Positions 20,029-46,203 of a stretch of DNA of 64,000 bases are shown here, in pieces. The position numbers and the translations under genes were made by a program. The stretch lies in sequence record NC_047713.1; one strand, 5' to 3'. Below the pieces are notes generated by a model. That model had not been told where the DNA came from and ran no database searches. It saw only the letters and a list, made by a program, of their open reading frames with translations. Numbering within the stretch: position 1 is the stretch's first letter; each line of letters opens with the position of its first letter.

Positions 20029-20403
20029 ATGAATACATATGGTTCTCCCGAAGGTTATCTCTTTAACCTTCATACCTGCTCAGCATCAGAAGCGAAGCGA
20101 ATGTGGAAAGAATCTATAAAGAATGATTGGAAACATAAATGTGCTTATTGTGGATCAGAACATGAAATTACTTTAGATCATATAGTACCCAAAGCAAAAG
20201 GGGGCACTAGTCACACAACCAATATCGTAGCCTGCTGTCGTTCTTGTAACGCCAGTAAGGCATATGAGGATTGGATTATCTGGTATATTCAACAGCCATT
20301 CTTCACTGAAGAGAGGAGGGAGGCTATTGAAAAGTGGATGGAGAAGGGTCTCCTCAACAATAACTTAGTTGCATATCCACCCAGAAGAAATGTCGTTTAT
20401 TGA
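20029..20403 (+). CDS. HNH endonuclease
   Basis: CAYCG..TLDHIVPKAKGG..NIVACCRSCNASK. Confidence 0.9.
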   Translation: MNTYGSPEGYLFNLHTCSASEAKRMWKESIKNDWKHKCAYCGSEHEITLDHIVPKAKGGTSHTTNIVACCRSCNASKAYEDWIIWYIQQPFFTEERREAIEKWMEKGLLNNNLVAYPPRRNVVY

Positions 20404-20619: not shown

Positions 20620-23600
20620 ATGATCTCAACAGCGACTAAGATTAAATTTAAAAGGTCTGGTGTAGCCGGACGTAGACCCTCCTTAGCTGATCTTCAGTTA
20701 GGTGAATTGGGGATCAATTATAACGATGGTAAACTATTTTTCCGACAGGAAAATGAAGTAGTTGGCTCTCGTATCATTGAACCTGGACAGGGTGATGTAA
20801 TCGGTAAGACTATTTTCGTATCCACAAAGGGTAACGATAACAATAGTGGTCTTAACGAAAGGGATGCCAAGAGAACTGTTAAAGCGGCCGCCGCAGTAGC
20901 AGAACCTGGTGACTCCATCAAACTGTATCCAGGTCAGTACATCGAAGATAACCCTATCGTATTTAAGGATAGGGTATCTGTAGAGGGTATGGAGCTTCGT
21001 AACGTTCTCGTTACTCCAGCCAACCCCAGTAAAGACTTGTATCAAGTTGGTGAGGCGTTCCACGCTACCAACCATTCCTTTGTGTCCAATAGGGATTCAA
21101 CAGATGGTGCCTCTATTATCACCTATCGTCCTCTAGAGGGAACTGCGTCTGACAGGTATTTTGACGCGGCTAGACTCATCAGGGACAATCTTAGCTTCAT
21201 TGCTAACGAGACAGTAGGTTTCCTAACCAGTGGATATTCAGGCTTTGCCGCTGGTCAGAGATCACAGGACGCTGCTCGTGCTCTAGAACTAAACAAGAAC
21301 TTCATAGTAGAAGAAGCATTTCAATATATCAACTCTCCTGATTATACAGGAGCCACATACTTCAACCCAGACCCAGCACAGTGTAAGAGAGACCTAGGAA
21401 ATATCATTGATGGTTGGAGATATGATCTCATCTCTGATGGTAACACCAGATCTACTGGTCTTGGTCTAACCTACTACGCACCTATTCCCTTTGTGAATAG
21501 TGCTAATGTTGCTGACCTTGTATACAACAGAAATAACGGTGATGTTCTAATTGAAACCGACGTAGATACACAGGTTTCAGTTGGTGAGAAGATCAAACTA
21601 CAGGATATCAGACTAGAGTGTGGTTCCTACAACAACGATTTCCTCATCACTGGTTTCAAGTATGATAATACCAGTGGTATTGGAACAGTCAATCTACCAT
21701 TCATTCATAACGTCAAGGTTGGAGACCTTGTTAAGTTTGATGGTTTAGAGTTTGATTGTCCTGCCTATGGTGCCATTGAATATGGTATCCAAGACTTCAA
21801 GTATAATGAAACTACTGGTGGAAGTGTTGTCACACTCACCGAAGATCACGATCTAAAGATTGGTGACACCATTGAACTAAGAGACCTTCAGTTCGATTGT
21901 CCCGCCTATGGTGGTGACTTCACTAACATCATCAACCTAGAATACAATAAGACCAGTGGTCAGGGTGTTATCACATATGACAAACCCGCCGATCTCAAGT
22001 CTGGTGACGTTGTTATCCTCTATGACCTCACACTAACTTGTGATGCTTATGGTAACGCTATCTCAGTTACTGATTTCTCTTATGATAACTTCACTGGTAT
22101 CACTGAAGTAGAAGTAAATAGACCCCACAACCTCCGTCCCGGAGACCTAATCAAACTAGAGAACCTTAAGTTCTCTTGTGATTCCTACCTTAATGAAACA
22201 TACAAGGTCTCTAACTTTGTATATAATGAGAGCACTGGTGATAGTGTCCTCACCCTAACTGAACCACATAGTTTAGTTGCTGGTAAGAACGTCAGACTTG
22301 CTGACCTAGTTTTCTCCTGTAACTCCTATGTTCCAACCGCCAAAGCAATCTCTGATTTCCAGTATGATGAAGTAGTTGGTATCTCTACTATTACTCTAGC
22401 ATCTCCACACAACTTATCAGTTGGTGAGCAGTTCAGACTAGAGGACCTAGTATTCTCCTGTAACTCATACTCCTTCACTGATATTCCTATCATTGATGCA
22501 CCATATGATAATGTAACTGGTTATGTAACCCTATCGTTCTCTGGTGACCACGGACAACAGGTTGGTGAGAGAGTAAGACTCAGAGATATTGAGTACTCCT
22601 GCCCTGGTGGTTCAGGTATCACTACAACCTTGTTCCCTGATGGAACCTTTGGTTATGAGTTTGAAATCCTAAGTGTTCCAAACACTAAGAAGATGATTCT
22701 TAATGTTGGCACCTCCACTATTGAACACTCCTATGTGAGTGGTGGTACTGCTACCGTTGGTATTACAACTACTATCTTCCCTGATGGAACACAAGGTTTC
22801 GACTTCAATGTATCCAGTGTTAATAGTTCCACTGTTATCGAAGCAAGTGTTGGTATTTCTACCATCGCTCACAACTATGTTTCTGGTGGATCATTATTCG
22901 TTGGTTTCACTACCACAGTATTCCCCGATGGAACACAAGGTGATACCTTCAGAGTTAATTCTATCCCTTCTAGCACTCAAATCAGTGTTAATGTTGGTGT
23001 ATCTTCTATCGCCCATACTTTCGTATCTGGTGGTACAGCAACTGACCTAGACTCTTTCATCCCTGTATCTGGTTTCACCTACAATGAAGGTGACGGAACT
23101 GGACTAGTATCCCTAGACAAGGCACACAACCTAGTGGTTGGTGACTCTTTTGTTCTAGAGGATCTTAAGTTCAACTGTAACTCCTACAGAACAGGTGGTA
23201 CTTCTACTATTGATATCACTAACTTTGAGTATGATAAGGTAACCGGACTATCTACAGTCACACTATCTTCTTCACACAACCTACATGTTAATGATACCGT
23301 AGCACTATATGATATCAAGTTCTCTTGTCCTGGTGGTTCAGGTATTACAACTAATATCTTCCCCGATGGAACCAGAGACAACTTCTATGATGTAGTTGCT
23401 GACCTAAACCCCAACCAGATTATTGTTCGTGTTGGTAAGTCTGACATTACTCACACATACGCTAGTGGTGGTAGTCTATCCGTTGGTATCACTACTAACA
23501 TCTTCCCTGATGGAACTAGACCTTCTGGTGACTTCTTCCAGGTTATCTCTGTTCCTTCTACCAAGTCTGTTCTAACTCAGGTTGGTCTATCCTCTATCGC

Positions 23601-26600
23601 CCACTCATACGCAAGTGGTGGTAAGTTCTACACTGGTATCACTACTAATGTATTCCCACAGGTATTCACCGACCCCAACATCAAGGTAACCAACGCTGTA
23701 TATGACGAAGTATCTGGTGTTATCACCATTACTACTAACAAGGCACACGGACTCACTGCTACCGCACCTGTTCTACTACAGGACCTAAACTTCTCTTGCC
23801 TCTCTGGTGGTGTAGGAAACACCCCAGGCAACCTTGTGTTCCCCAGGAACCAGGAAGTTTATGATGTTGTATCCGTTCTATCCCCCACCCAATATACGAT
23901 CAATGTAGGTCCTTCTGACTTCGCTCACACTTATGTTGATGGTGGTACTTCTACTACACAGAACATCACTAAGGCATCCTACAACAAAGGAACTGGTGAT
24001 CTAACAGTAACCCTAGACAAGCAACACGGTTATTCAGTTGGTGATCGTGCTAGTGTGGTTGATCTCCTCTTCTCCTGTCAGTCTGGTGGTCCTAACAACC
24101 AACCTGGAACACTTCTATTCCCCAGACCTACTGATGAGTATGAAGTTCTATCTGCAAGTGGTAAGACACTCACAGTTAATGTTGGAGCGTTCCCATCACT
24201 AGTTCATACCTATAAGAATGGTGGATCACTAACCTATAGTTCTACTGTACTTCCTGTAAGTAACGCAGTTTATGATCAATCAACTGGAGTTCTAACACTT
24301 ACCACATCAGTTGCACTAGGGGCACCAGTTGGTTCTACCATTAAGATGCAGGGTCTAAACTTCTCCTGTGCTTCTGGTGGTCCTGGTAATGACGCTGGTG
24401 CTATTGTATTCCCAAGACTAGACACCCCTACCTTCAAGGTTAAGGAAGTCAAGAGTGGTGTATCCTATGTTATTAATGTAGGGACCTCTACACTCTCACA
24501 CACATATACATCTGGTGGTTTCTCCTCACTCAAGAAGTTGAAGAACGACCCCAATATTTTCAAAGTTATCGACACCCCATCACCTAGTAAGGTTATTACT
24601 AATGTAGGTGTCTCATCTATCGCTCATGACTATGTGAGTGGTGGTAATATGTTTGTGGGTATCACCACTAATGTATTCCCTGATGGAACTCGCCCTGATG
24701 GAAGTAGGTTCGAAGTTATCTCCGCCCTATCACCCAACCAGGCACTCATCAACATCGGTGTTTCTACTATCACCCACAACTACGATAGTGGTGGTAGGAT
24801 GCAGTATGGTACTACCAATGAGAGACCTGTTCTAGACTTCCTATACGATGGTCAGACTGGTATCTCCACTGTAACTATTAGAGGAACTCATGGTTTGAAC
24901 CAGGGTGACCTAGTGAAACTCAGAGGTCTTGAGTTCGCTTGTACTAACTCACCTGGTATTACAACTACTATCTTCCCAGATGGAACTGCCGCTGGTCTCA
25001 ATATCTACAAGGTTACTGAGATTATTAGTAACAGTACCTTCAAGACAAATGTAGGTAGAGTTGGATTCGATCATACTTACATCCAAGGTGGTTCCGCTTT
25101 CGTTGGTATCACTACTAACATCTTCCCAGATGGAACACAAGGTTACAACTATACAGTTGCCGCCATTCCTAATAAGAATCAGGTAACAGTTGATGTGGGT
25201 ATCTCCAGTATCCAACATGATTATATTCGTGGTGGATCACTATTCTCTGGTAAGACTAACGAGAGAGATATCGCAGACTTCAAGTATGATCACATCTCTG
25301 GTGATGCGGTTCTTACCTTCAGAAAGGCACAGAACTTATTCACACAAGATCTAGTAAAACTTAAGAACCTTCAGTTTGATTGTCCAAACTCTACTGGTAT
25401 CACTACTACTCTCTTCCCAGACGGAACCAGAAGTAACCTCTTCCTAATCAAGGAGAGACTAAACCCAACACAGTTCAAACTCAATGTTGGCACTTCACCA
25501 TTCGGTCATGACTATGTGAGAGGAACAGGTCAGGCATTCGTTGGTATCACTACTAACATCTTCCCTGATACCAAGACACAACCAAGTAAGTTATTCAAGG
25601 TTGTTGATGTCCCAACTCCTACTACTATCTCCGCCAAGATTGGTGTATCCACTATCTCCCACTCATATGTTAAGGGTGGTAAGGTATTCGTTGGTATTAA
25701 CACTGATATCTTCCCTGGAGATGAGCAAGTATCACCACTAGGTGACACATATACAGTTCAGAGTATCACCAAAGATGGTGAGTTGGTTATCAATGTTGGA
25801 CTATCTTCTATCAGTCACTCTTATGGTGGCGGTGGTAAGGTTCTATATGGACAGAGTTCTGGTAACAACCTACAACATATCACTGGTCCTGGTGTCCTAG
25901 ATGCAACCATCGCCGCTGTGGACTTCGAGAAACAGGTAGCAATCAACGCACTAAACAACAGACCTTGGGGTTCATTCGTTCCTGAAGAGACTGCTGTTGT
26001 GGAGGCGTTCGCCTATGATAACCAGACTGGTTTCGGAACAGTAACTGCTAGAGGAATCAACGTCAACACTGGTGACACCATCAGAATGAGTGACATTCAG
26101 TTTGTTTGTTCTGAGGAGTACGCCGGTGTAACCACTACCTTCTTCCCTGATAATACTAGACCAGAGGGTCAGTACTTTAGAGTAGAAAGAAGAATCAACA
26201 TCGATGAGTTTGAAGTTAATATTGGTGTTTCTACTATCAAACACGTATTCAACTACGAAACAGGTGGTAACGTATATCGTTACAGACAGTCTATTCTAGA
26301 TGTTAACTACGATAGATCCAGTGGTATCACTAGTATCCGAGCAACCAAGCATGGTTACAAGGCGAAAGATATCGTGGAACTAGGTGATATCGAGTTCGAT
26401 TGCCCCGTATTCAAACCTCAATATGATATTGAGAACTTTGTTTATGATAACACAACTGGTCTATCCACAGTTACTACTACTGTAGATAACACCATCAAGG
26501 TAGGTGACAATGTAAAACTAGCAGACATCAAACTAGAGTGTCCTCCATATGGTAACCAGAGAGTTATTGATAACTTTGTTTATGATAATAAGAGTGGTCT

Positions 26601-29600
26601 TTCCACCATATCACTAACAGCAGCACACGGACTCAACCTAAGACCTAGACCTTCTGTTTCTATCTCTACCGCCCTCTATGATAACCAGACTGGTATCCTA
26701 ACCGTTACCACCAATGCTGACATCAACTTCACCGATAGAAGTGGTCAGGGTGTTCAACTCAGTGGTCTAAGGTTCTCCTGTGACTCCGCTGGTTTCCCTG
26801 GAACTCTCACCTACCCTGAAGAGAATCTAGTTTATGATATCCTAGAGATTCAGTCTCCTAGTAAGTTTAAGATTAATGTTGGTCTCTCCACTATCGCTCA
26901 CGAGTATGTGAATGGTGGTGCCGCTACTAAGGTTGATAGATTCGATGTGAAACTACAGGGTATCAAGTTTGATTGTCCCGCCTATGGAAACACAATCGAT
27001 GTTACTAACTTCCTATACGATCAGAGAAGTGGTAACTCACTAGTTACCGTAGATAAGGCACACAAACTATCTGTTGGTGATAACATCAAACTAGCGGATC
27101 TCAAGTTCCAATGTGCTCCATATGGTAACGATTACAATGTTCTAAACGCAGATTACGACAACACAACTGGTATTATTACAGTAACCACTAACCAAAACAT
27201 CAACGGTGTTGGTGTTGGTGATACTATTCGCCTCTCCAGACTACAGTTTGATTGTGTAGGTAGTGGTCCTGAGTATAATATCACTAACGTATTCTTCAAT
27301 ACTGGTAACAGATCAGTTATTCTCACAGTTCCTGAAAGACCAATTGGTCTAAACCCAGGTGATGACATTAAACTAACCAATATGTCATACCTAGAAGGTG
27401 GTAGTGGTAATGTAGTTGCGTATCCAGATGGAAGAGATTCAAGTCTAAACATCTTCCGTATCAATGATGTTCAACCTAACTCCATTCTCCCTGGATACTT
27501 CGATGTAACCACAGCGTTCCCCAATGTTAAGGATCCTTTCGCGATCTTCAACAATACTGGTAGACTAACCACTGGTATTACTACTAACATCTACCCTGAG
27601 AATGTAGGTGCTGAAGGTGGTTTCTATGAAGTTATCCGTCTAAGACAAGATAACCAGTTTGAGATTCAGGTAGGAACCTCTACTATCACTCACAACTATG
27701 TGAGACAAGGACAGATGTTTACTGGTGTAACCACCAACTTCTTCCCTGGTAACCTACAGAACTCACCTAGAGGAAACATCTTTGAGATTGTGGAAGTTCC
27801 CACAGCAACACAGGTGAGAATCAATGTAGGTGTATCTTCTATCTCTCATAGTTATGATAGTGGTGGTCAGATGTTTGTTGGTATTACTACTAACATCTTC
27901 CCTGATGGAACCAGAGGTAACCTATTCCCAGTTGTTGGAGTGGCAAATACTCTCACCCTAAGAATCGACGCTGGTGTATCCAGTATTCCTCACAACTATG
28001 TTTCTGGTGGAGAACTATTCGTAGGTATTACAACTAATATCTTCCCTGGTAACTCACAGAACTCACCAAGAGGTAGTATCTTCAAGGTTCTATCTAAGGA
28101 TAATGAGTGTGGTTCTGATAGATTCACTATCAACGTTGGTGTATCTTCTATCACTCACGGTTATGTTGAGGGTGGAACAGTCACCACTGGTGTTACAACT
28201 AATAAGTTCCCTGATGGAACACACGGATTCAAGTTCCCTGTTATCGATGTTCTAGATGACAACTACTTCACCGTGAATGTTGGTACTTCTACCATCACTC
28301 ACACTTACCTCTCTGGTGGTTTCACTAGAAGACTTGAAGTTCCTATCAATAGTTTCGTATATGATAGAGTTTCTGGTCTATCCACAGTGGGTATCCAAAG
28401 TCACAGAATGAATATCGGTGACCTTGTGAAACTTCGTGATGTGAAGTTCAACTGTGATCCATATGGTGGAGAAAAGACTATCTCTGGTGTTGTTTATGAT
28501 AATACCTCTGGTAGAATGACCGTTAACACCACTGGTTCTCATAGTCTAAACATCAATGATGTTGTGAAACTCTCCAATATTCAGTTGGATTGTTCCCCAT
28601 ATGGTAACGAGAGAACTATTACCGCCGCCACCTACAACAGAAACAATGGAAACCTAAGTGTTCAGGTATCTGAACCTCACAACCTCAAGATTAGTGAGAA
28701 TGTGAAACTCAAAGGTTTGGAGTTCTCCTGTTCCTCAGAACACGCAGGTGTGACAACAACAATCTTCCCAGATTCAACCGCACCTTCTCTAAACATCTAC
28801 GCCATCCAGAGTATCACCAACTCCACAACCTTCATGGTTAATGTTGGAACCTCTACTATCAGTCACAACTATGTTTCTGGTGGTTCCGCTTTCGTAGGTA
28901 TCACAACTAACATCTTCCCAGGTGATAGCCAGAACTCCCCCAGAGGTTCTTTCCTCAGTGTGGTAGATATCCCAGCATCAGACGCCTTCGTGGTGAATGT
29001 AGGGGTTTCTACTATCTCTCACGGGTATGTTAGAGGTGGATTGGTTCAGACAGGTATTACAACTGATGTATTCCCTGATGGAACACAGAGTGATTTCTTC
29101 AAGATTGAAGATGTCCCTAGTAATAATACAGTTGTAATCAACGCAGGTATCTCTTCTATCATCCACAGATACAACTCTGGTGGTTTCGCCGCCAAGTATG
29201 TTACCTATCAGTCCAATAACTCACAACTACTTGATAGTTCTGTTATTAGAGTGAGTGGTGATTGTATGGCAGTTGGTGAGAGAGTTGAAGAACTCGCAGG
29301 TATTGTTACCTCCATCATCAAGAATGGTCCTTCAATCGCACCTGGTGGTATTCCAGTAGATGTGGTAAGTGCATCCTACGACCAGTCTGGTGGAGCACTA
29401 TCAGTCACAGTCAAAGACGCAATTGACCTCACACCAACTAACATAGTTAGAATCGAAGGTCTTATCTTCGAGTGTGAGTCCTCTGGTGTAACAAACACTC
29501 GTGTATATCCTGATAATAAGGTATTCAACTATGAGGTTCTATCAGTTCAGTCTCCAACAACCTTCACTATCAATGTAGGTTCTCAGGCAGATATCCCACA

Positions 29601-32523
29601 CACATATGTGAATGGTGGAACTGTAAGACCAGGTAACAAGTTTGATGTGGCAACCGCAACCTACAATACTGAAAATGGTATTGTTAGAGTTACTACCACT
29701 GAAGATAACTACTTGGTTCTTGGTAGAGGAGTTAACCTACAGGGTCTAAACTTCTCCTGTACCTCTGGTGGTCCTAACAACAAACCTGGAACACTAACCT
29801 TCCCCGACAAAACACCAACCAATGTAACCGCCGCCACATATGATAGTGTGACTGGTGTATTACGTATCACAACCAACAGACCTCACCAAGCATACAAGGA
29901 CGCGTTTGTATCCCTAAACGGACTAACCTTCACTTGTGATCCAGGTGGTCCTCTAGTATTCCCTAGAAACCCTGATACTAAGTCCTTCAGAGTTACTAAG
30001 AGAGTTGATGACTACACATATGAGTGTCAGTTGGCACCGACCAATAAGGTTCATACTTATCTAAGTGGTGGTACTTCCTCCACAGGAAACGGAAACTTCA
30101 GAGTTTCTCGTCTCATTGATACAAAGACCTTCGAAGTCACAATGGTTCCTCTAGATCTACCACATACCTATGTAAATGGTGGTTCCGCCGCTAGTGTATT
30201 CACTAGACAGATCATTGATGGAATCAACATCAACACTAGGAAGTGTGCTAGAGACGTTAGACGTATCTACCTCGCAGTGGCACACGATATCACTCGTGGT
30301 GGTAACTGGAAGTGTGTTGAAGGAGCGAAACTCTACTACGATAACGTGGGTCAAACCAAGTTTATCTCTGGTGGTGAAGTAAATCAAACCGTTGAGGCAC
30401 TTGACTTCTCCCTAAACATTGTTAGATGTTTAATCAACAACGTAACATGGGGTGGAGTTCCAAGAGGATATCTCACTAAGGGTGAGAGAAGTGAACTAAG
30501 AATTCCATCTTCAGCTAAGACTTCAGTGGTTGGTTTCAGACAACAACTACTTTCCAACCAATACACTACTCAGAAGAAGAGTATTTCTGGTATGGTATAC
30601 GATAACCTTACGGGTATCGCAACCGTCACCACTAAACTCTCACATGAACTCATCAAGTATGATGGTATTCAACTCTCAGATATTGAGATGAGATGTACTG
30701 GTAGTCCAAGGATTACCACCAATGTATTCCCTGATGGAACACAAGGTGAGATCTTTGAGGTTATGGAAACTCTAGATGATAGAGTAGCATACATCGTAAC
30801 TGACGCGTCATACACCAACACCACTGGTAAGTTGGTAGTAACAACAACAGGAAACAATGATATTCCTGTTGGATCAAGAGCAAAACTAGATGGTCTACTC
30901 TGGACTTGTTCATACGATCCCTCAAAACAACTTAAGTTCCCAGAGAACAGGAAGTTCCGTTATGAGGTTATCGCAAAACCAGATGGTACAACACTAGAGT
31001 TCAATGTTGGTATCTCTACGATTCCACACACATTTGTTCCAGCTCCTATAGATGTTGAATACACAGTCAAGGAGGATCCAGTTAAGTTTAAGGTTCATGT
31101 TGGTACAGTTTCCTTCCCACACACCTACTTCGGTGGTGGAACAGTATGGCACAAACTACCATTCACTCCACCTTTCACCCAAACACAGATCAAGGACGTA
31201 TCACAACAGAAAGATCCAGTCCAGTTCTCTAACAATACTCCTAACGGATGTGCTAATGTATTCTCCGCTATCAGTAATTGTATTGGTGTTGTTACTAGTA
31301 TCGTAGCAAATGGATTAGAAGGATCAGGTATCTCCACAACTTATCCAGGTAATGATGGTAAAGGTGTTCCAACTATGGATGAGATGCCTTCACAGGGTGT
31401 TGGTAACATTATCAAAGGTCCATACATCAGAAACTGTACGAACTTCGTTCCCAAGTCTATTGGTATGAGAATGGATGGTTTCGACGCGGAACCTGGTGAT
31501 GAAATCTCCAATGGTGTTCAAGGTTCATCTAACGTTGACTCCTTCACCCAGTTCAACCCTGGTGGTGTTGGTTGTTCCATCTCTAACGGAACCTACCAAC
31601 AGTTGGTTTCTATCTTCACTATCTGTTGTGATGAAGCAATCGTATGTGACTCTGGAGCACAACTCGACCTCACTAACTCCAACTCTTCCTTCGGTAGATT
31701 GGGTCTAGTCGCAAGAGGTATTGGTGATAAACTCTCCAAGTGTATCGACAGATATACTGGTATCGTCGCTAAAGAGGCATCTATTGAAGATGACTTAGTT
31801 GTTGTGAAGGGTATTGGTGATAAGAGACCTTACGATGGTCAGGGTATCTTCTTCGGAGAACTCTTCAGGGATGTGGTTAGTATCGAAGTTCTGGACGGTG
31901 GTTCAGGTTATAACGATGATATTCCACCTAACGCGTTTGTCGCAGAACCTACTGGTCCCGCTGGTATTAAGGCGGAAGTTTCACCAACAGTCAGAGATGG
32001 TGTTGTTGTTTCTATCGAGGTTATCGCAAATGGTAACCAATACAGAGAGAAATTCCCTGAGGTTGTAATATCACCTCCTAAGAGTCCTCTTGGTAGAACC
32101 GCAAAAGCAAGGGCAATTACCGAACCTCTCTACTATAATGTAGAAAGTTCTTCCCCACCTGAAGAGGGTACAACTAGTATCATTTTCAAACAGCGTCTAA
32201 ATAATACCGTATCGGTAGGCACAACTGTATTCTTCTCTAGATTAAGTCTACAGATTGCCTCCTCTCACTCCTTCGAATACATTGGTGCTGGTAACAGCAT
32301 TAACGGAGCAAGACCTTCTGAAGGTGGAGTTCCAATTAAGGAAAATGAGATCGTGAAGGAAGACGGTGGTTCAATTGTCTATACCTCCACTGACCAGGCA
32401 GGTAACTTTAACATTGGTGACGATTTCGTTATCAACCAGTTCACTGGTACTATCACTGGTAGATCGTTCGATCAATCAGTCCTAAATAAAGTTACTCCAC
32501 TCATCATCGCCCTAGACAGTTAA
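20620..32523 (+). CDS. Giant (3967 aa) virion structural/fibre protein with 31 nested beta-domain repeats
   Basis: Fibre-attachment N-terminus IKFKRS..P..L..GELGINYNDGKLFF; beta-helix start FVSTKGNDNNSG..PGQYIE; repeats YD..TG..T....H....GD...L....F.C and GITT..FP..F.V..NVG.S...H.Y..GG. Confidence 0.85.
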   Translation: MISTATKIKFKRSGVAGRRPSLADLQLGELGINYNDGKLFFRQENEVVGSRIIEPGQGDVIGKTIFVSTKGNDNNSGLNERDAKRTVKAAAAVAEPGDSIKLYPGQYIEDNPIVFKDRVSVEGMELRNVLVTPANPSKDLYQVGEAFHATNHSFVSNRDSTDGASIITYRPLEGTASDRYFDAARLIRDNLSFIANETVGFLTSGYSGFAAGQRSQDAARALELNKNFIVEEAFQYINSPDYTGATYFNPDPAQCKRDLGNIIDGWRYDLISDGNTRSTGLGLTYYAPIPFVNSANVADLVYNRNNGDVLIETDVDTQVSVGEKIKLQDIRLECGSYNNDFLITGFKYDNTSGIGTVNLPFIHNVKVGDLVKFDGLEFDCPAYGAIEYGIQDFKYNETTGGSVVTLTEDHDLKIGDTIELRDLQFDCPAYGGDFTNIINLEYNKTSGQGVITYDKPADLKSGDVVILYDLTLTCDAYGNAISVTDFSYDNFTGITEVEVNRPHNLRPGDLIKLENLKFSCDSYLNETYKVSNFVYNESTGDSVLTLTEPHSLVAGKNVRLADLVFSCNSYVPTAKAISDFQYDEVVGISTITLASPHNLSVGEQFRLEDLVFSCNSYSFTDIPIIDAPYDNVTGYVTLSFSGDHGQQVGERVRLRDIEYSCPGGSGITTTLFPDGTFGYEFEILSVPNTKKMILNVGTSTIEHSYVSGGTATVGITTTIFPDGTQGFDFNVSSVNSSTVIEASVGISTIAHNYVSGGSLFVGFTTTVFPDGTQGDTFRVNSIPSSTQISVNVGVSSIAHTFVSGGTATDLDSFIPVSGFTYNEGDGTGLVSLDKAHNLVVGDSFVLEDLKFNCNSYRTGGTSTIDITNFEYDKVTGLSTVTLSSSHNLHVNDTVALYDIKFSCPGGSGITTNIFPDGTRDNFYDVVADLNPNQIIVRVGKSDITHTYASGGSLSVGITTNIFPDGTRPSGDFFQVISVPSTKSVLTQVGLSSIAHSYASGGKFYTGITTNVFPQVFTDPNIKVTNAVYDEVSGVITITTNKAHGLTATAPVLLQDLNFSCLSGGVGNTPGNLVFPRNQEVYDVVSVLSPTQYTINVGPSDFAHTYVDGGTSTTQNITKASYNKGTGDLTVTLDKQHGYSVGDRASVVDLLFSCQSGGPNNQPGTLLFPRPTDEYEVLSASGKTLTVNVGAFPSLVHTYKNGGSLTYSSTVLPVSNAVYDQSTGVLTLTTSVALGAPVGSTIKMQGLNFSCASGGPGNDAGAIVFPRLDTPTFKVKEVKSGVSYVINVGTSTLSHTYTSGGFSSLKKLKNDPNIFKVIDTPSPSKVITNVGVSSIAHDYVSGGNMFVGITTNVFPDGTRPDGSRFEVISALSPNQALINIGVSTITHNYDSGGRMQYGTTNERPVLDFLYDGQTGISTVTIRGTHGLNQGDLVKLRGLEFACTNSPGITTTIFPDGTAAGLNIYKVTEIISNSTFKTNVGRVGFDHTYIQGGSAFVGITTNIFPDGTQGYNYTVAAIPNKNQVTVDVGISSIQHDYIRGGSLFSGKTNERDIADFKYDHISGDAVLTFRKAQNLFTQDLVKLKNLQFDCPNSTGITTTLFPDGTRSNLFLIKERLNPTQFKLNVGTSPFGHDYVRGTGQAFVGITTNIFPDTKTQPSKLFKVVDVPTPTTISAKIGVSTISHSYVKGGKVFVGINTDIFPGDEQVSPLGDTYTVQSITKDGELVINVGLSSISHSYGGGGKVLYGQSSGNNLQHITGPGVLDATIAAVDFEKQVAINALNNRPWGSFVPEETAVVEAFAYDNQTGFGTVTARGINVNTGDTIRMSDIQFVCSEEYAGVTTTFFPDNTRPEGQYFRVERRINIDEFEVNIGVSTIKHVFNYETGGNVYRYRQSILDVNYDRSSGITSIRATKHGYKAKDIVELGDIEFDCPVFKPQYDIENFVYDNTTGLSTVTTTVDNTIKVGDNVKLADIKLECPPYGNQRVIDNFVYDNKSGLSTISLTAAHGLNLRPRPSVSISTALYDNQTGILTVTTNADINFTDRSGQGVQLSGLRFSCDSAGFPGTLTYPEENLVYDILEIQSPSKFKINVGLSTIAHEYVNGGAATKVDRFDVKLQGIKFDCPAYGNTIDVTNFLYDQRSGNSLVTVDKAHKLSVGDNIKLADLKFQCAPYGNDYNVLNADYDNTTGIITVTTNQNINGVGVGDTIRLSRLQFDCVGSGPEYNITNVFFNTGNRSVILTVPERPIGLNPGDDIKLTNMSYLEGGSGNVVAYPDGRDSSLNIFRINDVQPNSILPGYFDVTTAFPNVKDPFAIFNNTGRLTTGITTNIYPENVGAEGGFYEVIRLRQDNQFEIQVGTSTITHNYVRQGQMFTGVTTNFFPGNLQNSPRGNIFEIVEVPTATQVRINVGVSSISHSYDSGGQMFVGITTNIFPDGTRGNLFPVVGVANTLTLRIDAGVSSIPHNYVSGGELFVGITTNIFPGNSQNSPRGSIFKVLSKDNECGSDRFTINVGVSSITHGYVEGGTVTTGVTTNKFPDGTHGFKFPVIDVLDDNYFTVNVGTSTITHTYLSGGFTRRLEVPINSFVYDRVSGLSTVGIQSHRMNIGDLVKLRDVKFNCDPYGGEKTISGVVYDNTSGRMTVNTTGSHSLNINDVVKLSNIQLDCSPYGNERTITAATYNRNNGNLSVQVSEPHNLKISENVKLKGLEFSCSSEHAGVTTTIFPDSTAPSLNIYAIQSITNSTTFMVNVGTSTISHNYVSGGSAFVGITTNIFPGDSQNSPRGSFLSVVDIPASDAFVVNVGVSTISHGYVRGGLVQTGITTDVFPDGTQSDFFKIEDVPSNNTVVINAGISSIIHRYNSGGFAAKYVTYQSNNSQLLDSSVIRVSGDCMAVGERVEELAGIVTSIIKNGPSIAPGGIPVDVVSASYDQSGGALSVTVKDAIDLTPTNIVRIEGLIFECESSGVTNTRVYPDNKVFNYEVLSVQSPTTFTINVGSQADIPHTYVNGGTVRPGNKFDVATATYNTENGIVRVTTTEDNYLVLGRGVNLQGLNFSCTSGGPNNKPGTLTFPDKTPTNVTAATYDSVTGVLRITTNRPHQAYKDAFVSLNGLTFTCDPGGPLVFPRNPDTKSFRVTKRVDDYTYECQLAPTNKVHTYLSGGTSSTGNGNFRVSRLIDTKTFEVTMVPLDLPHTYVNGGSAASVFTRQIIDGININTRKCARDVRRIYLAVAHDITRGGNWKCVEGAKLYYDNVGQTKFISGGEVNQTVEALDFSLNIVRCLINNVTWGGVPRGYLTKGERSELRIPSSAKTSVVGFRQQLLSNQYTTQKKSISGMVYDNLTGIATVTTKLSHELIKYDGIQLSDIEMRCTGSPRITTNVFPDGTQGEIFEVMETLDDRVAYIVTDASYTNTTGKLVVTTTGNNDIPVGSRAKLDGLLWTCSYDPSKQLKFPENRKFRYEVIAKPDGTTLEFNVGISTIPHTFVPAPIDVEYTVKEDPVKFKVHVGTVSFPHTYFGGGTVWHKLPFTPPFTQTQIKDVSQQKDPVQFSNNTPNGCANVFSAISNCIGVVTSIVANGLEGSGISTTYPGNDGKGVPTMDEMPSQGVGNIIKGPYIRNCTNFVPKSIGMRMDGFDAEPGDEISNGVQGSSNVDSFTQFNPGGVGCSISNGTYQQLVSIFTICCDEAIVCDSGAQLDLTNSNSSFGRLGLVARGIGDKLSKCIDRYTGIVAKEASIEDDLVVVKGIGDKRPYDGQGIFFGELFRDVVSIEVLDGGSGYNDDIPPNAFVAEPTGPAGIKAEVSPTVRDGVVVSIEVIANGNQYREKFPEVVISPPKSPLGRTAKARAITEPLYYNVESSSPPEEGTTSIIFKQRLNNTVSVGTTVFFSRLSLQIASSHSFEYIGAGNSINGARPSEGGVPIKENEIVKEDGGSIVYTSTDQAGNFNIGDDFVINQFTGTITGRSFDQSVLNKVTPLIIALDS

Positions 32524-32527
32524 GATC

Positions 32528-32878
32528 ATGGCAGCAGTTGCTTTAAATACGTTCAAAACGGTCAGGCATTTAGTTTCTGATTCCAATGTGGGGATTTATA
32601 CATCCCCCATTGGTGTTGCCTCTATTGTCCTATACGCTCAGGCGACACACGTTGCGAACGATGAAAGTGTATATTTCATTAACTTTTCACATGCTCGTCC
32701 CGACGAGGATCCTGTGCAGTTTGAAATCATTAAGGATGGTCCAGTTATCCCTAATGACGCACTAAACCTATTAACAGGTAGATTAGTTCTCGAAACTGGA
32801 GACGAACTTAGAGTATCAGGAAATACGACCGGAGATGTGAAGGTTGTTGTTTCTATTCTAGAGACTGCAAAGTCTTAA
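32528..32878 (+). CDS. Small virion-associated beta protein
   Basis: 116 aa, ..GRLVLETGDELRVS..VVSILE; co-transcribed with the giant gene. Confidence 0.65.
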   Translation: MAAVALNTFKTVRHLVSDSNVGIYTSPIGVASIVLYAQATHVANDESVYFINFSHARPDEDPVQFEIIKDGPVIPNDALNLLTGRLVLETGDELRVSGNTTGDVKVVVSILETAKS

Positions 32879-32910: not shown

Positions 32911-35900
32911 ATGCCTCTAAATTATCTTACCGGAAGAGTAAGTAGATTACAAGTTGGATTTCCAGGGTTTTCAACAGCAAAGGACCTTACAGTTGATGTA
33001 GCAGGTGCCATTGGTATTGATACCCAAAACCCAAGAGCAGCTGCCGACTTCCCAGATGTCAGTATCCGTGGTGATATTGTTGACTCTGTTGGATTTACCG
33101 GTGGTATTGGGTATTTTCTAGCGCAAGATGTTCAGGGTGTTCGGTGGGTAGAGGCTCCACCTATCAACTCTAATGCCATCTTAGTGTTAGACAATGGAGT
33201 TATCGTTGGTGCTGGATCATTCATTGGTCTAAACTTTGACTCTGGTAAGGATGAGGACTTCCTCTCGGTTGTTCCTGACCCACTAAACCCACAGATTGCA
33301 AAGATTGCATATGATGTTCGTTGGGTAAGATATAATTACGGTAATAATAAAGGTATCTCCACAGGTTTTGGAGATAATGGTGACTACTCCTCTATCCCTG
33401 GTTATGGAACCACAGAGGCAGTTGGTGTTACCTCAGTTGGTATTGGTACTAACCAACCACTAGATGACTTCCAAGTTGGTATTGGATCTACTGGTGTTAC
33501 TATCAACGGACCTCTAGGTCTAGTTGATGCAGAAATTATTAAAGCAAAATCAATCTCGGTTGAAGGAAACCTAGAGGTTGAATCACTTATTGTTAGACCT
33601 GGTGTTGCCACTCTAACCACTCTAGATGTATTGAACGAGGCGTTCATACCAGTAGAGTATGTTGGTTTCTCCAGCATTCAAGATGCAAATATTGATGCTC
33701 TCTTTGCTAATCAGTTACTAGCAGGTATTACTACCCTAGGTTTCGGTGGTGAAGATGTATTCATCCTCAACGACTTATATGTTCAGGGTGGTTTAGGTAC
33801 CTTCGATGGCGACGTATTCGTTGGTGGAGACCTAACTGTTAAGGGTGAGACGTTCTTCAACCAGATTAACGCAGTCAACTTATCAGTATCTGGTATTGCC
33901 ACTATCGTCCAAGCGGAGATAGCTGTTGGTTTAGTTACCGATCTAAAAGTATCTGGTTTCTCTACACTATCAGATTTCTCATTCAACATTGGTGTTGGTA
34001 CATACCTAGAACTAGAAGATCTAGATGTATCTGGTGTTGGTAGTTTTGGTGTTGTCAACTCTGGTGATATTAATGTTAGTGGTGGTTTAACCGCTAGTGA
34101 GATTGATGCAGATAAGGGATACATTGGTATTCTCACAGCAGACTCTATTGTATCTGGTGCAGGTACTATTGGTTCTATCGAGTCTGATGGGAACCTAACA
34201 ACACTTAATGATATTATTGTTGGTGGTGCTTCAACCTTCGTTGGTTTGGGTACTTTCCAAGACGATCTCTTTGTTGGTGGTGACCTCTTTGTTAGAGGTG
34301 ATGTTACCTTTAAGAACATTAATGGTGAACAACTACTAATCAGTGGTATTGGTACCATCAAGGAACTAGTCTTTGATAGTGGTATTGGAACCTCACTAGA
34401 AGTGAGAGATCAGATTACGACTGGTATATCTACGATCAATGAAGCAGATATTCAAGATGCCGCTGTTGAGAGACTTACTGTTGGTGATGCAGAGATCATC
34501 GGTATCGCAACTATTACCGAGATTGATGTAGATAGAGGTAGAGTTGGTATCCTAACTGGTACAGACCTCTCCTATGCTGGTATCGGTACTATCACGGAGA
34601 TTGATGTTGACCAGGGTAGAGTTGGTCTAGTCACTGGTGACACACTACTATACTACGAACAGTCTAGGATCAATAGAGTTACCTTCTTTGATAACTACCT
34701 ATCAGTTAATCAGAGTCTAAGAGTTTCTGGTCTCTCCACCTTTGTTGGAACAGGTACATTCTTCAATGACTTGTATGTTGGTGGTGACCTATATGTTGCT
34801 GGTGAACTAAACTTCAAACAACTCAATGGTGAGAACCTATACCTAACTGGTGTTGGTACCATCTATGATTTACGTAACACTGTTGGTTTCATTACTAACC
34901 TCTACGTAGAAGAGTCTGTAACTGGTTTAGCAACCATCAGTAGTCTAGTTGGTTCTTCCGCCACTATCACAGACTTCACTGGTGAGTCACTACTCATCCA
35001 GAATCCATTCAACCCAATGCCTTTGGATCCAACTGGGATCCCAGGACAGGGTGTTATTGATAGTCTCCTAGTTAGAAACCTAACTTCTTCTAACAACATT
35101 CTAGCCAATGACATTGATGCCAACTTCGTTGACACCGATGATCTAAAGGCTGGTGTTGGTACTATCACTGACCTAGAGTGGACTACCGCTGTTGGTGATG
35201 ACACTACTACCAATACTCTACAGGTTACTGATACAGCAACCATTAACATCATCGATGCCAATCAGATCGATGCCGAAGATGCCAACATTGGAGTTGCCAC
35301 CCTCTCTAGTCTCCTAGTAACTGGTGTCACTACCTTTAAGGGTCAGGTTGATATTGAGGATATTGAGTTCGTTGACCAGAGTGTCACCGGTATTTCCTCC
35401 ATCAACATCCTCAAGTTCAATGTTGGTTATGGAACCTACCTAGAGGTTACTGACTCAGTAACTGGTGTTGGAACTATTGGTCTTGCCAGTATCACAACCG
35501 CTCAGGTATCCTTCCTAGATGTAAGAGATGAGGTAGTTGGAGCATCCACTATTGGTGTTCTAACAGTAACTGAAGGATTTGCAGTAACTGGTTTCTCCAC
35601 CTTCGTTGGTTTCACTACCTATAAAGGAGATGTATTTGTTGATGGTAACTTAACTGTTACTGGTTTCGTTAGTTTCACACAACTAAACGCTGATCAATCA
35701 CAGATTGGTATCCTAACTGTATTCGATGCGTTAGACGCTAGAACGGGTGTTGGTACATTCAAACACCTAGAGACAGTAGATAGTGCAGTTCTATCAGGTG
35801 TATCTACCATTGGACTCACAACCTTCAAGAATGGTGATGTTAATATCAACCGCAACTTAACAGTTGGTGGTATCACTACCTTCATTGGTAATGTTTTCAT

Positions 35901-38517: not shown

Positions 38518-38537
38518 AACACCTCTCCCACTCCCTC

Positions 38538-38545
38538 TATAAATA
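38538..38545 (+). promoter_or_regulatory. T4-type late promoter
   Basis: TATAAATA. Confidence 0.75.
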
Positions 38546-38588
38546 TCTGTATATCTAACACTGCAGATTATAGGGGGAATGTGAACCC

Positions 38589-46145: not shown

Positions 46146-46203
46146 TAAATACAAATACGGCTCAATGAGCCCTTTTGTACGTACACAAAGGAGAAAAACC
46201 TAA

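What the first reader, a model, noticed from the sequence alone, without database searches (positions are those of the whole stretch)
21480..31150. 'Matryoshka' protein: 31 split domains nested like balanced parentheses in the 3967-aa virion protein
Seen: the repeats are not simple tandem copies. Each ~95-aa unit has an A half (I..F.YD..TG...T....H.L..GD...L..L.F.C) and a B half (GITT..FP...F.V....F.VNVG.S.I.H.Y..GG). Writing A as '(' and B as ')', my manual parse gives block 1 (21480-25845) = (((((((( ))) (( )) ()()() ) ) () ) () ) ), with 15 A, 15 B and depth 8. Block 2 (25990-29193) = () ((( () ((( )))))) ((())), 11/11. Block 3 (29350-30192) = () ( () ). Block 4 (30574-31150) = ( () ). The count never goes negative and each block closes at zero. 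Last-in-first-out pairing matches like with like: two similar A halves (VGDNVKLADIKLEC, VGDNIKLADLKFQC) both pair with B halves carrying the rare NSPRG insertion. Inference: each domain sits in a loop of the previous one, so one chain runs out and back and branches, making a tree- or antler-shaped appendage. I know of no description of recursive domain insertion this deep. The unit loosely resembles FCCH-like beta-barrels seen in phage proteins (unverified).
Basis: partly seen in the sequence, partly recalled or inferred. Interest (0 to 1): 0.92.

Follow-up and report, generated by a model that had tools for sequence, protein, structure and literature searches.

The report
Nested split-barrel domains in cyanophage fibre
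A 3967-residue tail-fibre-like protein of a marine cyanophage seems to be built from 31 small beta-barrel domains inserted inside one another up to eight levels deep, the most extreme case of recursive domain insertion I could find, though the principle is already known from cyanobacterial RNA polymerase.

Summary
ORF 20620-32523 of Synechococcus phage ACG-2014f carries 31 A halves (46 aa) and 31 B halves (48 aa). They form four blocks, each a balanced-parenthesis word, with maximum depth 8. One B is degenerate. Four halves are themselves split and resume exactly after complete inserted AB units.

The nesting is a family trait. Among 50 distinct balanced architectures in homologues, 44 are Dyck words (balanced at the end, never negative) against 8.6 expected by chance. 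Non-repeat spacers sit at depth 0.

AlphaFold2 supports last-in-first-out pairing. In A4-A8+B1-B3, only A6-A8 form their third strand. Deleting B3 removes that strand from A6 alone, about 190 residues away. No coordinates were available, so this is indirect.

The A+B unit resembles the FCCH barrel of E1 enzymes (Foldseek). My covariation tests were inconclusive.

The protein is a fibre or baseplate-associated virion protein by synteny and homology. Conserved N and C termini flank a variable nested array.

Cyanobacterial RNA polymerase Si3 has solved discontinuous, nested SBHM domains, reported as six levels. I rate this a new and more extreme variant of a known kind. The tree-like shape and the function are inferred, not shown.

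The parts
20620..32523 (+). Giant ORF, 3967 aa (AIX21586, annotated 'hypothetical protein'); tail-fibre-like virion protein
   Evidence: PHROG 3442, plus tail-fibre PHROGs 17885 and 5342
20620..21498 (+). N-terminal region, aa 1-293, shared with shorter cyanophage fibres. Sub-threshold DUF1565 (beta-helix) match at aa 70-126. Helical segment at about aa 170-293.
   Evidence: tblastn to 91 phage records; 37-54% identity to Sf-CH5, S-SKS1 and S-SCSM1 homologues; Pfam DUF1565 at 17.4 bits, below the 20.3 cutoff
21499..25848 (+). Block 1, aa 294-1743: 15 domains in a single root, word (((((((()))(())()()()))())())), depth 8. Domain 1 is closed by halves 1450 aa apart.
21916..23046 (+). Fragment folded with AlphaFold2 (aa 433-809: A4-A8, B1-B3). 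A second job lacked B3 (aa 433-761).
   Evidence: and 50/61. The third strand of A6 is present only when B3 is present.
22480..22758 (+). Domain 8 (aa 621-713): the deepest, contiguous A+B unit (depth 8)
23635..23676 (+). N-piece of the split B half of domain 5 (GITTNVFP...). It is followed by three complete AB units.
24538..24657 (+). C-piece of the split B half of domain 5 (HMM positions 13-48). It resumes after the three inserted units.
25849..25989 (+). Spacer 1 (aa 1744-1790), non-repeat, at nesting depth 0
25990..29196 (+). Block 2, aa 1791-2859: 11 domains, word ()(((()((()))))) ((())); three roots
26557..26643 (+). N-piece of the split A half of domain 19 (HMM positions 3-27). It is followed by one complete AB unit (aa 2012-2104).
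   Evidence: S-CAM7-type orthologues carry AABB at this site.
26941..26991 (+). C-piece of the split A half of domain 19 (HMM positions 31-46)
27271..27573 (+). Domain 23 (aa 2218-2318): degenerate tip unit. Its A lacks the Cys. Its B lacks the VNVG..H.Y..GG motif and is detected only at a relaxed threshold.
   Evidence: B hit at 2268-2288, E 0.015. It is needed for block 2 to balance.
29197..29352 (+). Spacer 2 (aa 2860-2911), non-repeat, depth 0
29353..30195 (+). Block 3, aa 2912-3192: 3 domains, ()(()). Domain 28 has a split B (pieces 29776-29814 and 30079-30195).
30196..30573 (+). Spacer 3 (aa 3193-3318), probably helical, depth 0. It is paralogous to the segment before block 1 and homologous to S-SKS1 aa 213-330.
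30574..31152 (+). Block 4, aa 3319-3511: 2 domains, (()). Domain 30 has a B half split near column 24 (pieces 30709-30786 and 31051-31152).
31153..32520 (+). C-terminal region, aa 3512-3967. This is the most conserved part across genera (55-59% identity). Fold unknown.
   Evidence: no PDB, Pfam or NCBIfam match
32528..32878 (+). Conserved 116-aa ORF immediately downstream. It is syntenic in S-SCSM1 (annotated virion protein), Sf-CH5 and S-SKS1. It may be a fibre partner or assembly factor.
   Evidence: (phrog_1276); no similarity to the giant protein

Best explanation
The gene encodes a fibre or baseplate-associated virion protein. Conserved N- and C-terminal parts (about 290 and 455 aa) flank a 3200-aa array of 31 FCCH-like beta-barrel domains of about 95 aa each.

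Each barrel is made of a three-stranded N-terminal half (A) and a three- to four-stranded C-terminal half (B). The barrel tolerates insertions in four surface loops, mainly the A|B junction. Copies of the same barrel have been inserted there repeatedly.

As a result, the chain runs outward through a series of A halves and comes back through the matching B halves, and each A closes with its last-in-first-out B partner. Consecutive barrels are therefore joined by two antiparallel linkers. Every completed nest returns the chain to where it started. Several inserts in one host barrel create branch points: domain 5 hosts five children.

The outcome would be seven root barrels carrying rods and branches up to eight barrels long, hung on a core made of the termini and three spacers.

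Shown (in silico): the balanced order, the split halves, family-wide conservation of the grammar, the dependence of A6 on B3 in AlphaFold2, and the FCCH-like fold.

Inferred: the rod or antler shape, the stiffness conferred by double tethering, attachment to the baseplate, and a role in reaching or adhering to the host surface.
For: 1. HMM mapping gives 31 A and 31 B in four Dyck words, depth 8.

2. Four halves are interrupted and resume at the right HMM position after 3, 1, 1 and 1 complete AB units.

3. Family level: 253 homologues have at least 4 halves. They give 149 distinct words, of which 50 are balanced and 44 are Dyck, against 8.6 expected; none of 200000 simulations reached 44. Of 101 spacers longer than 40 aa, 79 lie at depth 0, although depth 0 accounts for only 131 of 1557 inter-token positions.

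4. Orthologues at about 60% identity differ by balanced changes only, for example versus () inside the split A, or () versus (()). Short homologues have one AB (Sf-CH5), ABAB (S-SKS1) or (()) (S-SCSM1) between the same termini.

5. AlphaFold2 on A4-A8+B1-B3: A6, A7 and A8 form the third strand (E125-135, E172-182, E219-228). The orphans A4 and A5 form only the first hairpin.

6. The same fragment without B3: A6 loses that strand and its pLDDT falls from 78/86/89/86/66 to 72/82/84/78/60. A7 and A8 are unchanged.

7. Foldseek: Uba1/Uba6 E1 enzymes with probability 1.00 over about 130-150 columns. A BFVD hit is named 'E1 FCCH domain containing protein'. PF16190 is precomputed on two homologues.

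8. Register-specific feature match: the A motif K-[LF]-x-[DN] goes with a long FP loop in the LIFO partner (odds ratio 11). The association is lost when the pairing is shifted by one.

9. Virion or fibre context: the gene sits in the structural module next to baseplate-wedge genes. The S-SCSM1 homologue is annotated 'long tail fiber protein (virion protein)' from a proteome study (PMC9602691).
Against: - No coordinates, contact map or PAE were available. Pairing is inferred from DSSP and pLDDT differences between two single best models, built on a shallow alignment of 19 sequences (mean pLDDT 78-79, pTM 0.36).
- Only one pair (A6-B3, about 190 aa apart) was tested. Closure over 1450 aa (domain 1) is untested.
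- The covariation test was not significant on representatives below 50% identity: mean difference 0.9, 95% CI -2.3 to 4.0. A mirror-similarity test was also not significant.
- 141 of 253 homologues parse as unbalanced. This is attributable to gene fragments and divergent B halves missed by my HMM, but I did not prove that for each case.
- One B in the window is degenerate, and balance depends on counting it.
- The units do not reach Pfam FCCH by sequence.
- Leaf and stem barrels are equally conserved, 0.61 versus 0.63. There is therefore no sign that the tips are the variable, host-contacting parts.
Confidence: 0.75

Rival explanations
1. Trimeric fold-back fibre. The protein is a homotrimer, as most tail fibres are. 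A and B segments are layers of an inter-chain beta-structure in which each chain runs out and back, as in the needle domain of T4 gp37. In this reading, A(i) and B(i) lie at the same height but do not form autonomous monomeric barrels.
For: An out-and-back chain also predicts LIFO order and balanced counts. Some AB-containing homologues carry Peptidase_S74 (PF13884) and Mtd_N (PF18454) domains, which are typical of trimeric fibres. The pTM of the monomer models is low, 0.36.
Against: Monomer AlphaFold2 already gives strands and pLDDT of 80-92 for complete A+B units. Its best structural matches are monomeric FCCH barrels. Plain tandem arrays and single AB units are common, and a fold-back layer model does not need them. 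Branching words such as (()) are hard to fit into a single coaxial shaft. A trimeric core with monomeric nested side branches would be compatible with the best explanation.
Confidence: 0.12
2. Evolutionary relic. The nesting records how the gene grew by insertion of AB copies, but today only the short-range (innermost) pairs fold as barrels. Far-separated outer halves would then be linkers or pack in another way.
For: Only a pair about 190 aa apart was tested. Covariation for nested pairs is weak. Orphan A halves still show pLDDT of 75-82, so they may be partly stable alone.
Against: Outer halves keep the full invariant signature (Y, G, C / P, NVG, H, Y, GG) with HMM scores as high as inner ones. 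They are as conserved among orthologues as leaf domains. Balance is maintained across about 40% sequence divergence. That would not be selected if the outer halves no longer needed partners.
Confidence: 0.08
3. Two independent repeat families. A and B are separate small modules amplified in runs by tandem duplication. In this reading, balanced counts are coincidental or a by-product of my parsing.
For: Runs of A followed by runs of B look superficially like two tandem arrays. Many distant homologues parse with an excess of A.
Against: 44 of 50 balanced words are Dyck against 8.6 expected. Spacers lie at depth 0. Split halves resume after balanced inserts. The third strand of A depends on a distant B in AlphaFold2. 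Excess-A proteins contain unassigned segments of about 40 aa after each A, consistent with divergent B halves. DNA repeats are only 60-75% identical, so there is no recent tandem amplification.
Confidence: 0.05

Closest known systems
Si3 insertion of cyanobacterial RNA polymerase beta' (rpoC2): eight sandwich-barrel hybrid motifs, four of them discontinuous (crystal and cryo-EM structures, PMC10895346; described as six-level recursive insertion in PMC13114784)
   Same: A small beta-rich domain is inserted repeatedly into copies of itself. The polypeptide folds back over itself. Discontinuous domains are assembled from distant segments. The result is an elongated rod (150 A), with branch points where one host carries several inserts.
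   Different: The fold differs (SBHM, not FCCH-like; no RNAP among the Foldseek hits). The scale differs: 8-12 domains and 4-6 levels against 31 domains and 8 levels. The context differs: an insertion in an enzyme's trigger loop against a phage virion appendage. Si3 is solved experimentally, whereas this case is predicted only.
FCCH domain of ubiquitin-activating enzyme E1 (Pfam PF16190), and FCCH-like decoration domains of siphovirus tail-tube proteins (PMC13576161)
   Same: A small antiparallel beta-barrel of about 90 aa (described as six-stranded with Greek-key topology in PMC13576161), found on the outside of phage tail-tube proteins. It is the best Foldseek match to the A+B unit.
   Different: Sequence similarity is below Pfam thresholds for the window's units. 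Known FCCH domains are single and continuous. None is described as hosting copies of itself.
Giant fibre and baseplate proteins of T4-like cyanophages, e.g. S-SCSM1 ORF26 'long tail fiber protein', S-T4 4749-aa 'baseplate wedge subunit' with YHYH domain, S-CAM7 4168-aa protein
   Same: These are homologues carrying the same A/B units in Dyck order. They share the N and C termini and the same structural gene neighbourhood.
   Different: They are annotated only as hypothetical, fibre or wedge proteins. I found no description of the nested grammar. The number and arrangement of units differ: 1 to about 35 units, depth 1-8.
Tandem Ig-like, FN3 or BIg domain arrays in phage fibres and bacterial adhesins
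   Same: Many copies of a small beta domain build a long surface appendage.
   Different: Those are beads on a single string, with one linker between neighbours and the chain end at the tip. Here neighbours are joined by two linkers and the chain returns to its origin, so arrays are side branches that close on themselves.

Membership tests
Recursive (nested) homotypic domain insertion, as in RNAP Si3 | The same domain family acts both as host and as insert | tested here: met
   All 62 halves match the same two HMMs. Complete AB units lie inside interrupted AB units.
Recursive (nested) homotypic domain insertion, as in RNAP Si3 | The order of half-domains is a balanced, never-negative (LIFO) word | tested here: met
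   Window: 31/31 in four Dyck blocks. Family: 44 of 50 balanced words are Dyck against 8.6 expected.
Recursive (nested) homotypic domain insertion, as in RNAP Si3 | Discontinuous halves physically assemble into one domain | tested here: inconclusive
   The AlphaFold2 deletion test supports the A6-B3 pairing. No coordinates and no experiment were available. The covariation test was not significant.
Recursive (nested) homotypic domain insertion, as in RNAP Si3 | SBHM fold (needed for membership of the Si3 family itself) | tested here: not met
   The Foldseek top specific hits are E1 FCCH barrels, not RNAP. The case therefore works like Si3 but is not a member of that family.
E1_FCCH-like beta-barrel (PF16190 / fold level) | Structural similarity to the FCCH barrel of Uba1 | tested here: met
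   Foldseek probability 1.00 to about 30 Uba1/Uba6 chains over 130-150 columns, with weak E-values of about 8e-3. A BFVD hit is named as an FCCH-containing protein.
E1_FCCH-like beta-barrel (PF16190 / fold level) | Sequence match to Pfam PF16190 above its threshold | tested here: not met
   None of 13 AB units hit it at E<=10, and the whole protein has no Pfam hit. Only precomputed hits exist, on homologues P0014 and P0058.
E1_FCCH-like beta-barrel (PF16190 / fold level) | About six antiparallel strands in about 90 residues | tested here: met
   DSSP of the models gives 3 strands per complete A and 3-4 per B.
Phage tail fibre or baseplate-attached fibre of T4-like cyanophages | Encoded in the tail/baseplate structural module | tested here: met
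   The gene is followed by ORFs of 1868, 2518 and 1956 aa. The first matches baseplate-wedge PHROGs and the second is annotated 'baseplate wedge initiator'. A 'tail fiber' CDS lies upstream.
Phage tail fibre or baseplate-attached fibre of T4-like cyanophages | Present in purified virions | not testable with these tools
   Only by homology. S-SCSM1 ORF26 (N terminus 37% and C terminus 52% identical) is annotated as a virion protein, from the proteome in PMC9602691.
Phage tail fibre or baseplate-attached fibre of T4-like cyanophages | Homotrimeric assembly and receptor binding | not tested
   No multimer prediction was available. No S74 chaperone domain is present in the window protein, although some homologues have one.
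Simple tandem repeat protein | Head-to-tail copies of one unit | tested here: not met
   Runs such as AAAAAAAABBB occur. Only 7 of 31 units sit at depth 1.

The most novel reading that the evidence does not exclude
A family of phage virion proteins (at least 622 clusters at 50% identity) uses a self-inserting FCCH-like barrel as a construction grammar. Recursive insertion of a domain into its own loops would build double-tethered, branched rods. The window protein would be the deepest and largest example known: 31 domains, 8 levels, and a domain closed across 1450 residues. If real, it poses an extreme folding problem, because outer domains cannot close until more than 1000 residues of inner domains have been made. 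It would also offer a natural blueprint for rigid branched protein scaffolds.
Probability: 0.6. Interest if true: 0.85.

Novelty: new variant of a known kind. Interest (0 to 1): 0.76.

Why it matters
Domain insertion is usually one level deep. The record described so far is the six-level SBHM nest in cyanobacterial RNA polymerase Si3.

This case would show the same principle used independently, with another fold, as the main building rule of a whole family of phage appendages, and pushed to 31 domains and 8 levels with branching.

It would make three questions testable:
- How does a domain whose halves are more than 1000 residues apart fold, whether co-translationally or with help from a chaperone?
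- Does double tethering give stiffer rods than beads-on-a-string arrays?
- What do the enormous, unannotated 'hypothetical' fibre genes of marine cyanophages look like and do in host recognition?

It also warns annotators and structure-prediction pipelines that cutting such proteins into consecutive pieces, as BFVD does for the homologues, separates the halves of most domains.

Tried and rejected
Database searches that found nothing:
- Pfam on the whole protein, on 13 AB units, on the termini and on three short homologues gave no family above threshold. There was only a sub-threshold DUF1565 match at aa 70-126.
- NCBIfam gave nothing useful.
- PDB by sequence found nothing for the AB profile, the N terminus, the C terminus or a C-terminal profile.
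With a single fragment it returned only 3 viral loci. Genome contigs gave no relatives.

Covariation tests:
- A statistical potential trained on 881 adjacent AB pairs gave a peak at the LIFO offset when all proteins were used.
- The effect disappeared on representatives below 50% identity, and a mirror-similarity test was not significant. I therefore do not count covariation as evidence.
- Likely causes are missed degenerate halves, which shift the pairing, and few independent nests.

Other negative results:
- Leaf barrels are as conserved as stem barrels, 0.61 versus 0.63, so 'variable tips' is rejected.
- hhalign finds no homology between A and B, probability 0.2%, so internal pseudo-symmetry is rejected.
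- DNA repeats are only 60-75% identical, so recent tandem amplification is rejected.
- The downstream 116-aa ORF shows no similarity to the giant protein, so it is not a free AB unit.
- Model files are not exposed in /data, so contacts could not be read.
Full report
**What the window is**

The finding lies in one ORF, 20620-32523 (+), 3967 aa with no internal stop. The DNA is 100% identical to Synechococcus phage ACG-2014f_Syn7803C8 (KJ019058; Kyanoviridae, a T4-like cyanomyovirus). There the ORF is AIX21586, annotated 'hypothetical protein'.

The gene sits in the structural module:
- Upstream are a 'tail fiber' CDS, psbA/psbD and an HNH endonuclease.
- Downstream are a 116-aa ORF and three more giant ORFs of 1868, 2518 and 1956 aa. 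The first matches baseplate-wedge PHROGs and the second is annotated 'baseplate wedge initiator'.

The whole protein has no Pfam family. It matches its own PHROG and two 'tail fiber protein' PHROGs.

**Checking the observation**

I seeded two HMMs from the sequence, A (46 positions) and B (48 positions), and iterated them on the protein. They gave 32 A and 32 B hits, mostly with per-domain E-values of 1e-15 to 1e-23. Nothing else in the six-frame translation of the window matched.

The hits include partial ones that turned out to be informative:
- A B half stops after 'GITTNVFP' (aa 1006-1019) and resumes at HMM position 13 (aa 1307-1346) after three complete AB units.
- An A half stops at HMM position 27 (aa 1980-2008) and resumes at position 31 (aa 2108-2124) after one complete AB unit.
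- Two more B halves (domains 28 and 30) are split by one AB unit each.
- One B (aa 2265-2318) is degenerate and detectable only at a relaxed threshold.

A stack parse yields 31 domains, 7 roots and maximum depth 8. Domain 5 is a hub with five children, and the halves of domain 1 span 1450 residues.

Chance is unlikely. P(Dyck) is 1/32 for 31+31 tokens. All three long spacers lie at depth 0, where only 6 of 61 internal positions lie. All four interrupted halves enclose balanced inserts.

They are the A|B junction, two B loops and one A loop.

**Is it a family property?**

Short homologues share the N terminus (37-54% identity) and the C terminus (41-52% over the BLASTP matches, which for S-SKS1 also span spacer 3 and block 4). 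Between these they carry one AB (Sf-CH5, 836 aa), ABAB (S-SKS1, 928 aa) or (()) (S-SCSM1, 1478 aa). S-CAM7 (4168 aa) has the window's grammar with extra balanced pairs.

A large protein search returned 137 homologues. A profile search of 1.84 billion representatives found 622 proteins at E<=1e-3.

After retraining the HMMs on these, 253 proteins had at least four halves:
- 112 were balanced, and 106 of those never went negative.
- Counting distinct architectures only, there were 149 words, 50 balanced and 44 Dyck, against 8.6 expected if order were random. None of 200000 simulations reached 44.
- The six exceptions are short proteins that begin with ')', which I read as probable gene fragments.
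- Spacers longer than 40 aa lie at depth 0 in 79 of 101 cases, although depth 0 makes up only 131 of 1557 inter-token positions.
- Orthologues at about 60% identity differ only by balanced changes.

Proteins with a large excess of A, such as P0127, have unassigned segments of about 40 aa after each A. These look like divergent B halves that my model misses. The unbalanced parses are therefore not clean counter-examples, but they are also not resolved.

The units also occur in the 4500-5500-aa YHYH-domain 'baseplate wedge subunit' proteins, for example in phage S-T4.

**Do LIFO partners form one domain?**

I had two structure predictions and no access to coordinates, so I designed a readout based on secondary structure.

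Job 1 folded aa 433-809 (A4-A8, B1-B3) with 19 aligned homologues that all cover the full fragment. Mean pLDDT was 77.7.
- The three A halves that have LIFO partners (A6, A7, A8) each form three strands, including the 'V.L..L.F.C' strand (E125-135, E172-182, E219-228).
- The orphans A4 and A5 form only the first hairpin.

Job 2 used the same alignment cut before B3.
- A6 alone changed. Its third strand vanished, leaving it like A4 and A5.
- Its pLDDT fell from 78/86/89/86/66 to 72/82/84/78/60.
- A7 and A8 kept their strands.

So in the model a segment about 190 residues downstream is needed for A6 to complete its fold. This is what LIFO pairing predicts and what FIFO pairing or independent folding does not. 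It is one pair and one best model per job, and therefore indirect.

**Other pairing tests**

A statistical potential trained on adjacent AB pairs scored LIFO partners above neighbours when all proteins were pooled. The effect was not significant on representatives below 50% identity, nor in a mirror-similarity test. I treat covariation as inconclusive.

A narrower feature does hold. A halves with K-[LF]-x-[DN] pair with B halves carrying the long 'NSPRG-type' FP loop (odds ratio 11), and the link disappears if the pairing is shifted by one. However, the motif was chosen after looking at the data, and the orthologues are not independent.

**What the domain is**

- Foldseek of the model against the PDB gave no hit at E<=0.001. 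About 30 chains of ubiquitin-activating enzymes Uba1/Uba6 matched with probability 1.00 over 130-150 columns.
- That corresponds to the FCCH beta-barrel, described as six-stranded with Greek-key topology in PMC13576161.
- Two homologues carry precomputed PF16190 hits. BFVD returned an 'E1 FCCH domain containing protein' from an uncultured phage alongside the family's own members.
- The window's units do not reach Pfam FCCH by sequence.
- FCCH-like domains are already known as outward-facing decorations on siphovirus tail tubes (PMC13576161).
- A and B are not detectably homologous to each other.

**How it probably works**

Shown: the grammar and its conservation. Shown in silico: completion of one A by its distant B. 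The rest is inference.

A barrel whose termini lie together, with permissive loops on its surface, can host a copy of itself. My recollection is that FCCH is itself an inserted domain in E1, which would fit adjacent termini, but I did not check this here. I could not check where the permissive loops sit without coordinates. Repeating the insertion gives a chain of barrels joined by two antiparallel linkers, ending in a contiguous tip barrel. Several inserts in one host give branches.

Every closed nest returns the chain to its entry point. The four blocks would therefore behave as side branches on a core formed by the conserved termini and the spacers, which look helical by eye and were not tested. 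Arrays of any size could be gained or lost without disturbing that core. This fits the range from 1 to about 35 units seen between identical termini.

By synteny and homology the protein is a fibre or baseplate appendage. The S-SCSM1 homologue is annotated as a virion protein on the basis of a proteome study (PMC9602691). A role in reach or adhesion to the host surface is plausible but untested. Tip barrels are not more variable than stem barrels, and the C terminus is the most conserved part.

**Comparison with what is known**

The closest system is the Si3 insertion of cyanobacterial RNA polymerase. [quoted passage not shown] A 2026 survey of 2.7 million domains singles it out as a six-level recursive insertion (PMC13114784).

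This case works the same way but is not a member of that family, because the fold differs. It is larger and deeper (31 domains, 8 levels). In my searches I found no paper describing this grammar in phage fibres or FCCH-like domains. The library excludes most subscription journals, so absence is not proof.

**Verdict**

The novelty is real but is one of degree and context, not of kind. Remaining rivals are a trimeric fold-back shaft, and a 'relic' in which only the inner pairs still fold. Separating them needs coordinates or experiments.

Noticed in passing
window 20029-20403 (+): A 124-aa HNH endonuclease ORF (PHROG 2214, E 1e-37) lies about 200 nt upstream of the giant gene. It may be a homing endonuclease next to a highly variable structural gene.
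   Followed up: no
window 32528-32878 (+): A 116-aa ORF (phrog_1276) starts 5 nt after the giant gene's stop. Small ORFs of 112-114 aa occupy the same position in S-SCSM1 (annotated virion protein), Sf-CH5 and S-SKS1; I did not compare their sequences. It has no similarity to the A/B units. It is a candidate fibre partner or assembly factor.
   Followed up: partly
every A/B unit, e.g. window 22600-22602 (Cys of A8) and the His of each B half: Each barrel keeps one invariant Cys at the end of A ('F.C') and one invariant His plus Tyr in B ('H.Y..GG'). That makes about 30 apparently unpaired Cys in an extracellular protein. This could reflect a metal site or a covalent A-B cross-link. It is unexplained.
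   Followed up: no
window 27271-27573 (aa 2218-2318): The tip unit of the six-deep nest is degenerate. Its A lacks the Cys (it reads 'MSYLEGGSGN') and its B lacks the VNVG..H.Y..GG motif. It may be a decaying or re-purposed tip domain.
   Followed up: partly
window 20827-20997 (aa 70-126), and the C-terminal region at about 31300-32000: The N terminus has a sub-threshold DUF1565 (right-handed beta-helix) match, and by eye the C-terminal region looks beta-helix-like. If the two parts form one domain, the whole 3200-aa array would itself be an insertion, an outermost shell.
   Followed up: partly
window 21379-21444 (aa 254-275) and 30244-30309 (aa 3209-3230): The segments before block 1 and before block 4 share a motif, C[KA]RD....I......D[IL]..GGN. 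This suggests that 'spacer + block' modules were duplicated as units.
   Followed up: no
orthologues P0014-P0025, positions aligned to window 22480-22758 (domain 8): In several orthologues the innermost unit A8-B1 belongs to a different subtype ('YSCNTGTEVYPDVAGG...' or 'SCGFGT.VYP...' instead of 'YSCPGGSGITTTLFPDGT'). The tip unit was exchanged while the outer shells stayed in place.
   Followed up: no
window 32911-52074: Three further giant ORFs (1868, 2518 and 1956 aa) follow. The first matches baseplate-wedge PHROGs and the second is annotated 'baseplate wedge initiator'. They contain no A/B units. Together with the 3967-aa gene, they account for about 31 kb of this 64-kb window.
   Followed up: partly
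BFVD entries A0A0E3G4F4_1..3 and A0A0E3G2L9_1..2: The public predicted-structure library splits these giant proteins into consecutive pieces. With a nested architecture, this separates the two halves of most domains, so those models cannot be right for the outer shells.
   Followed up: no
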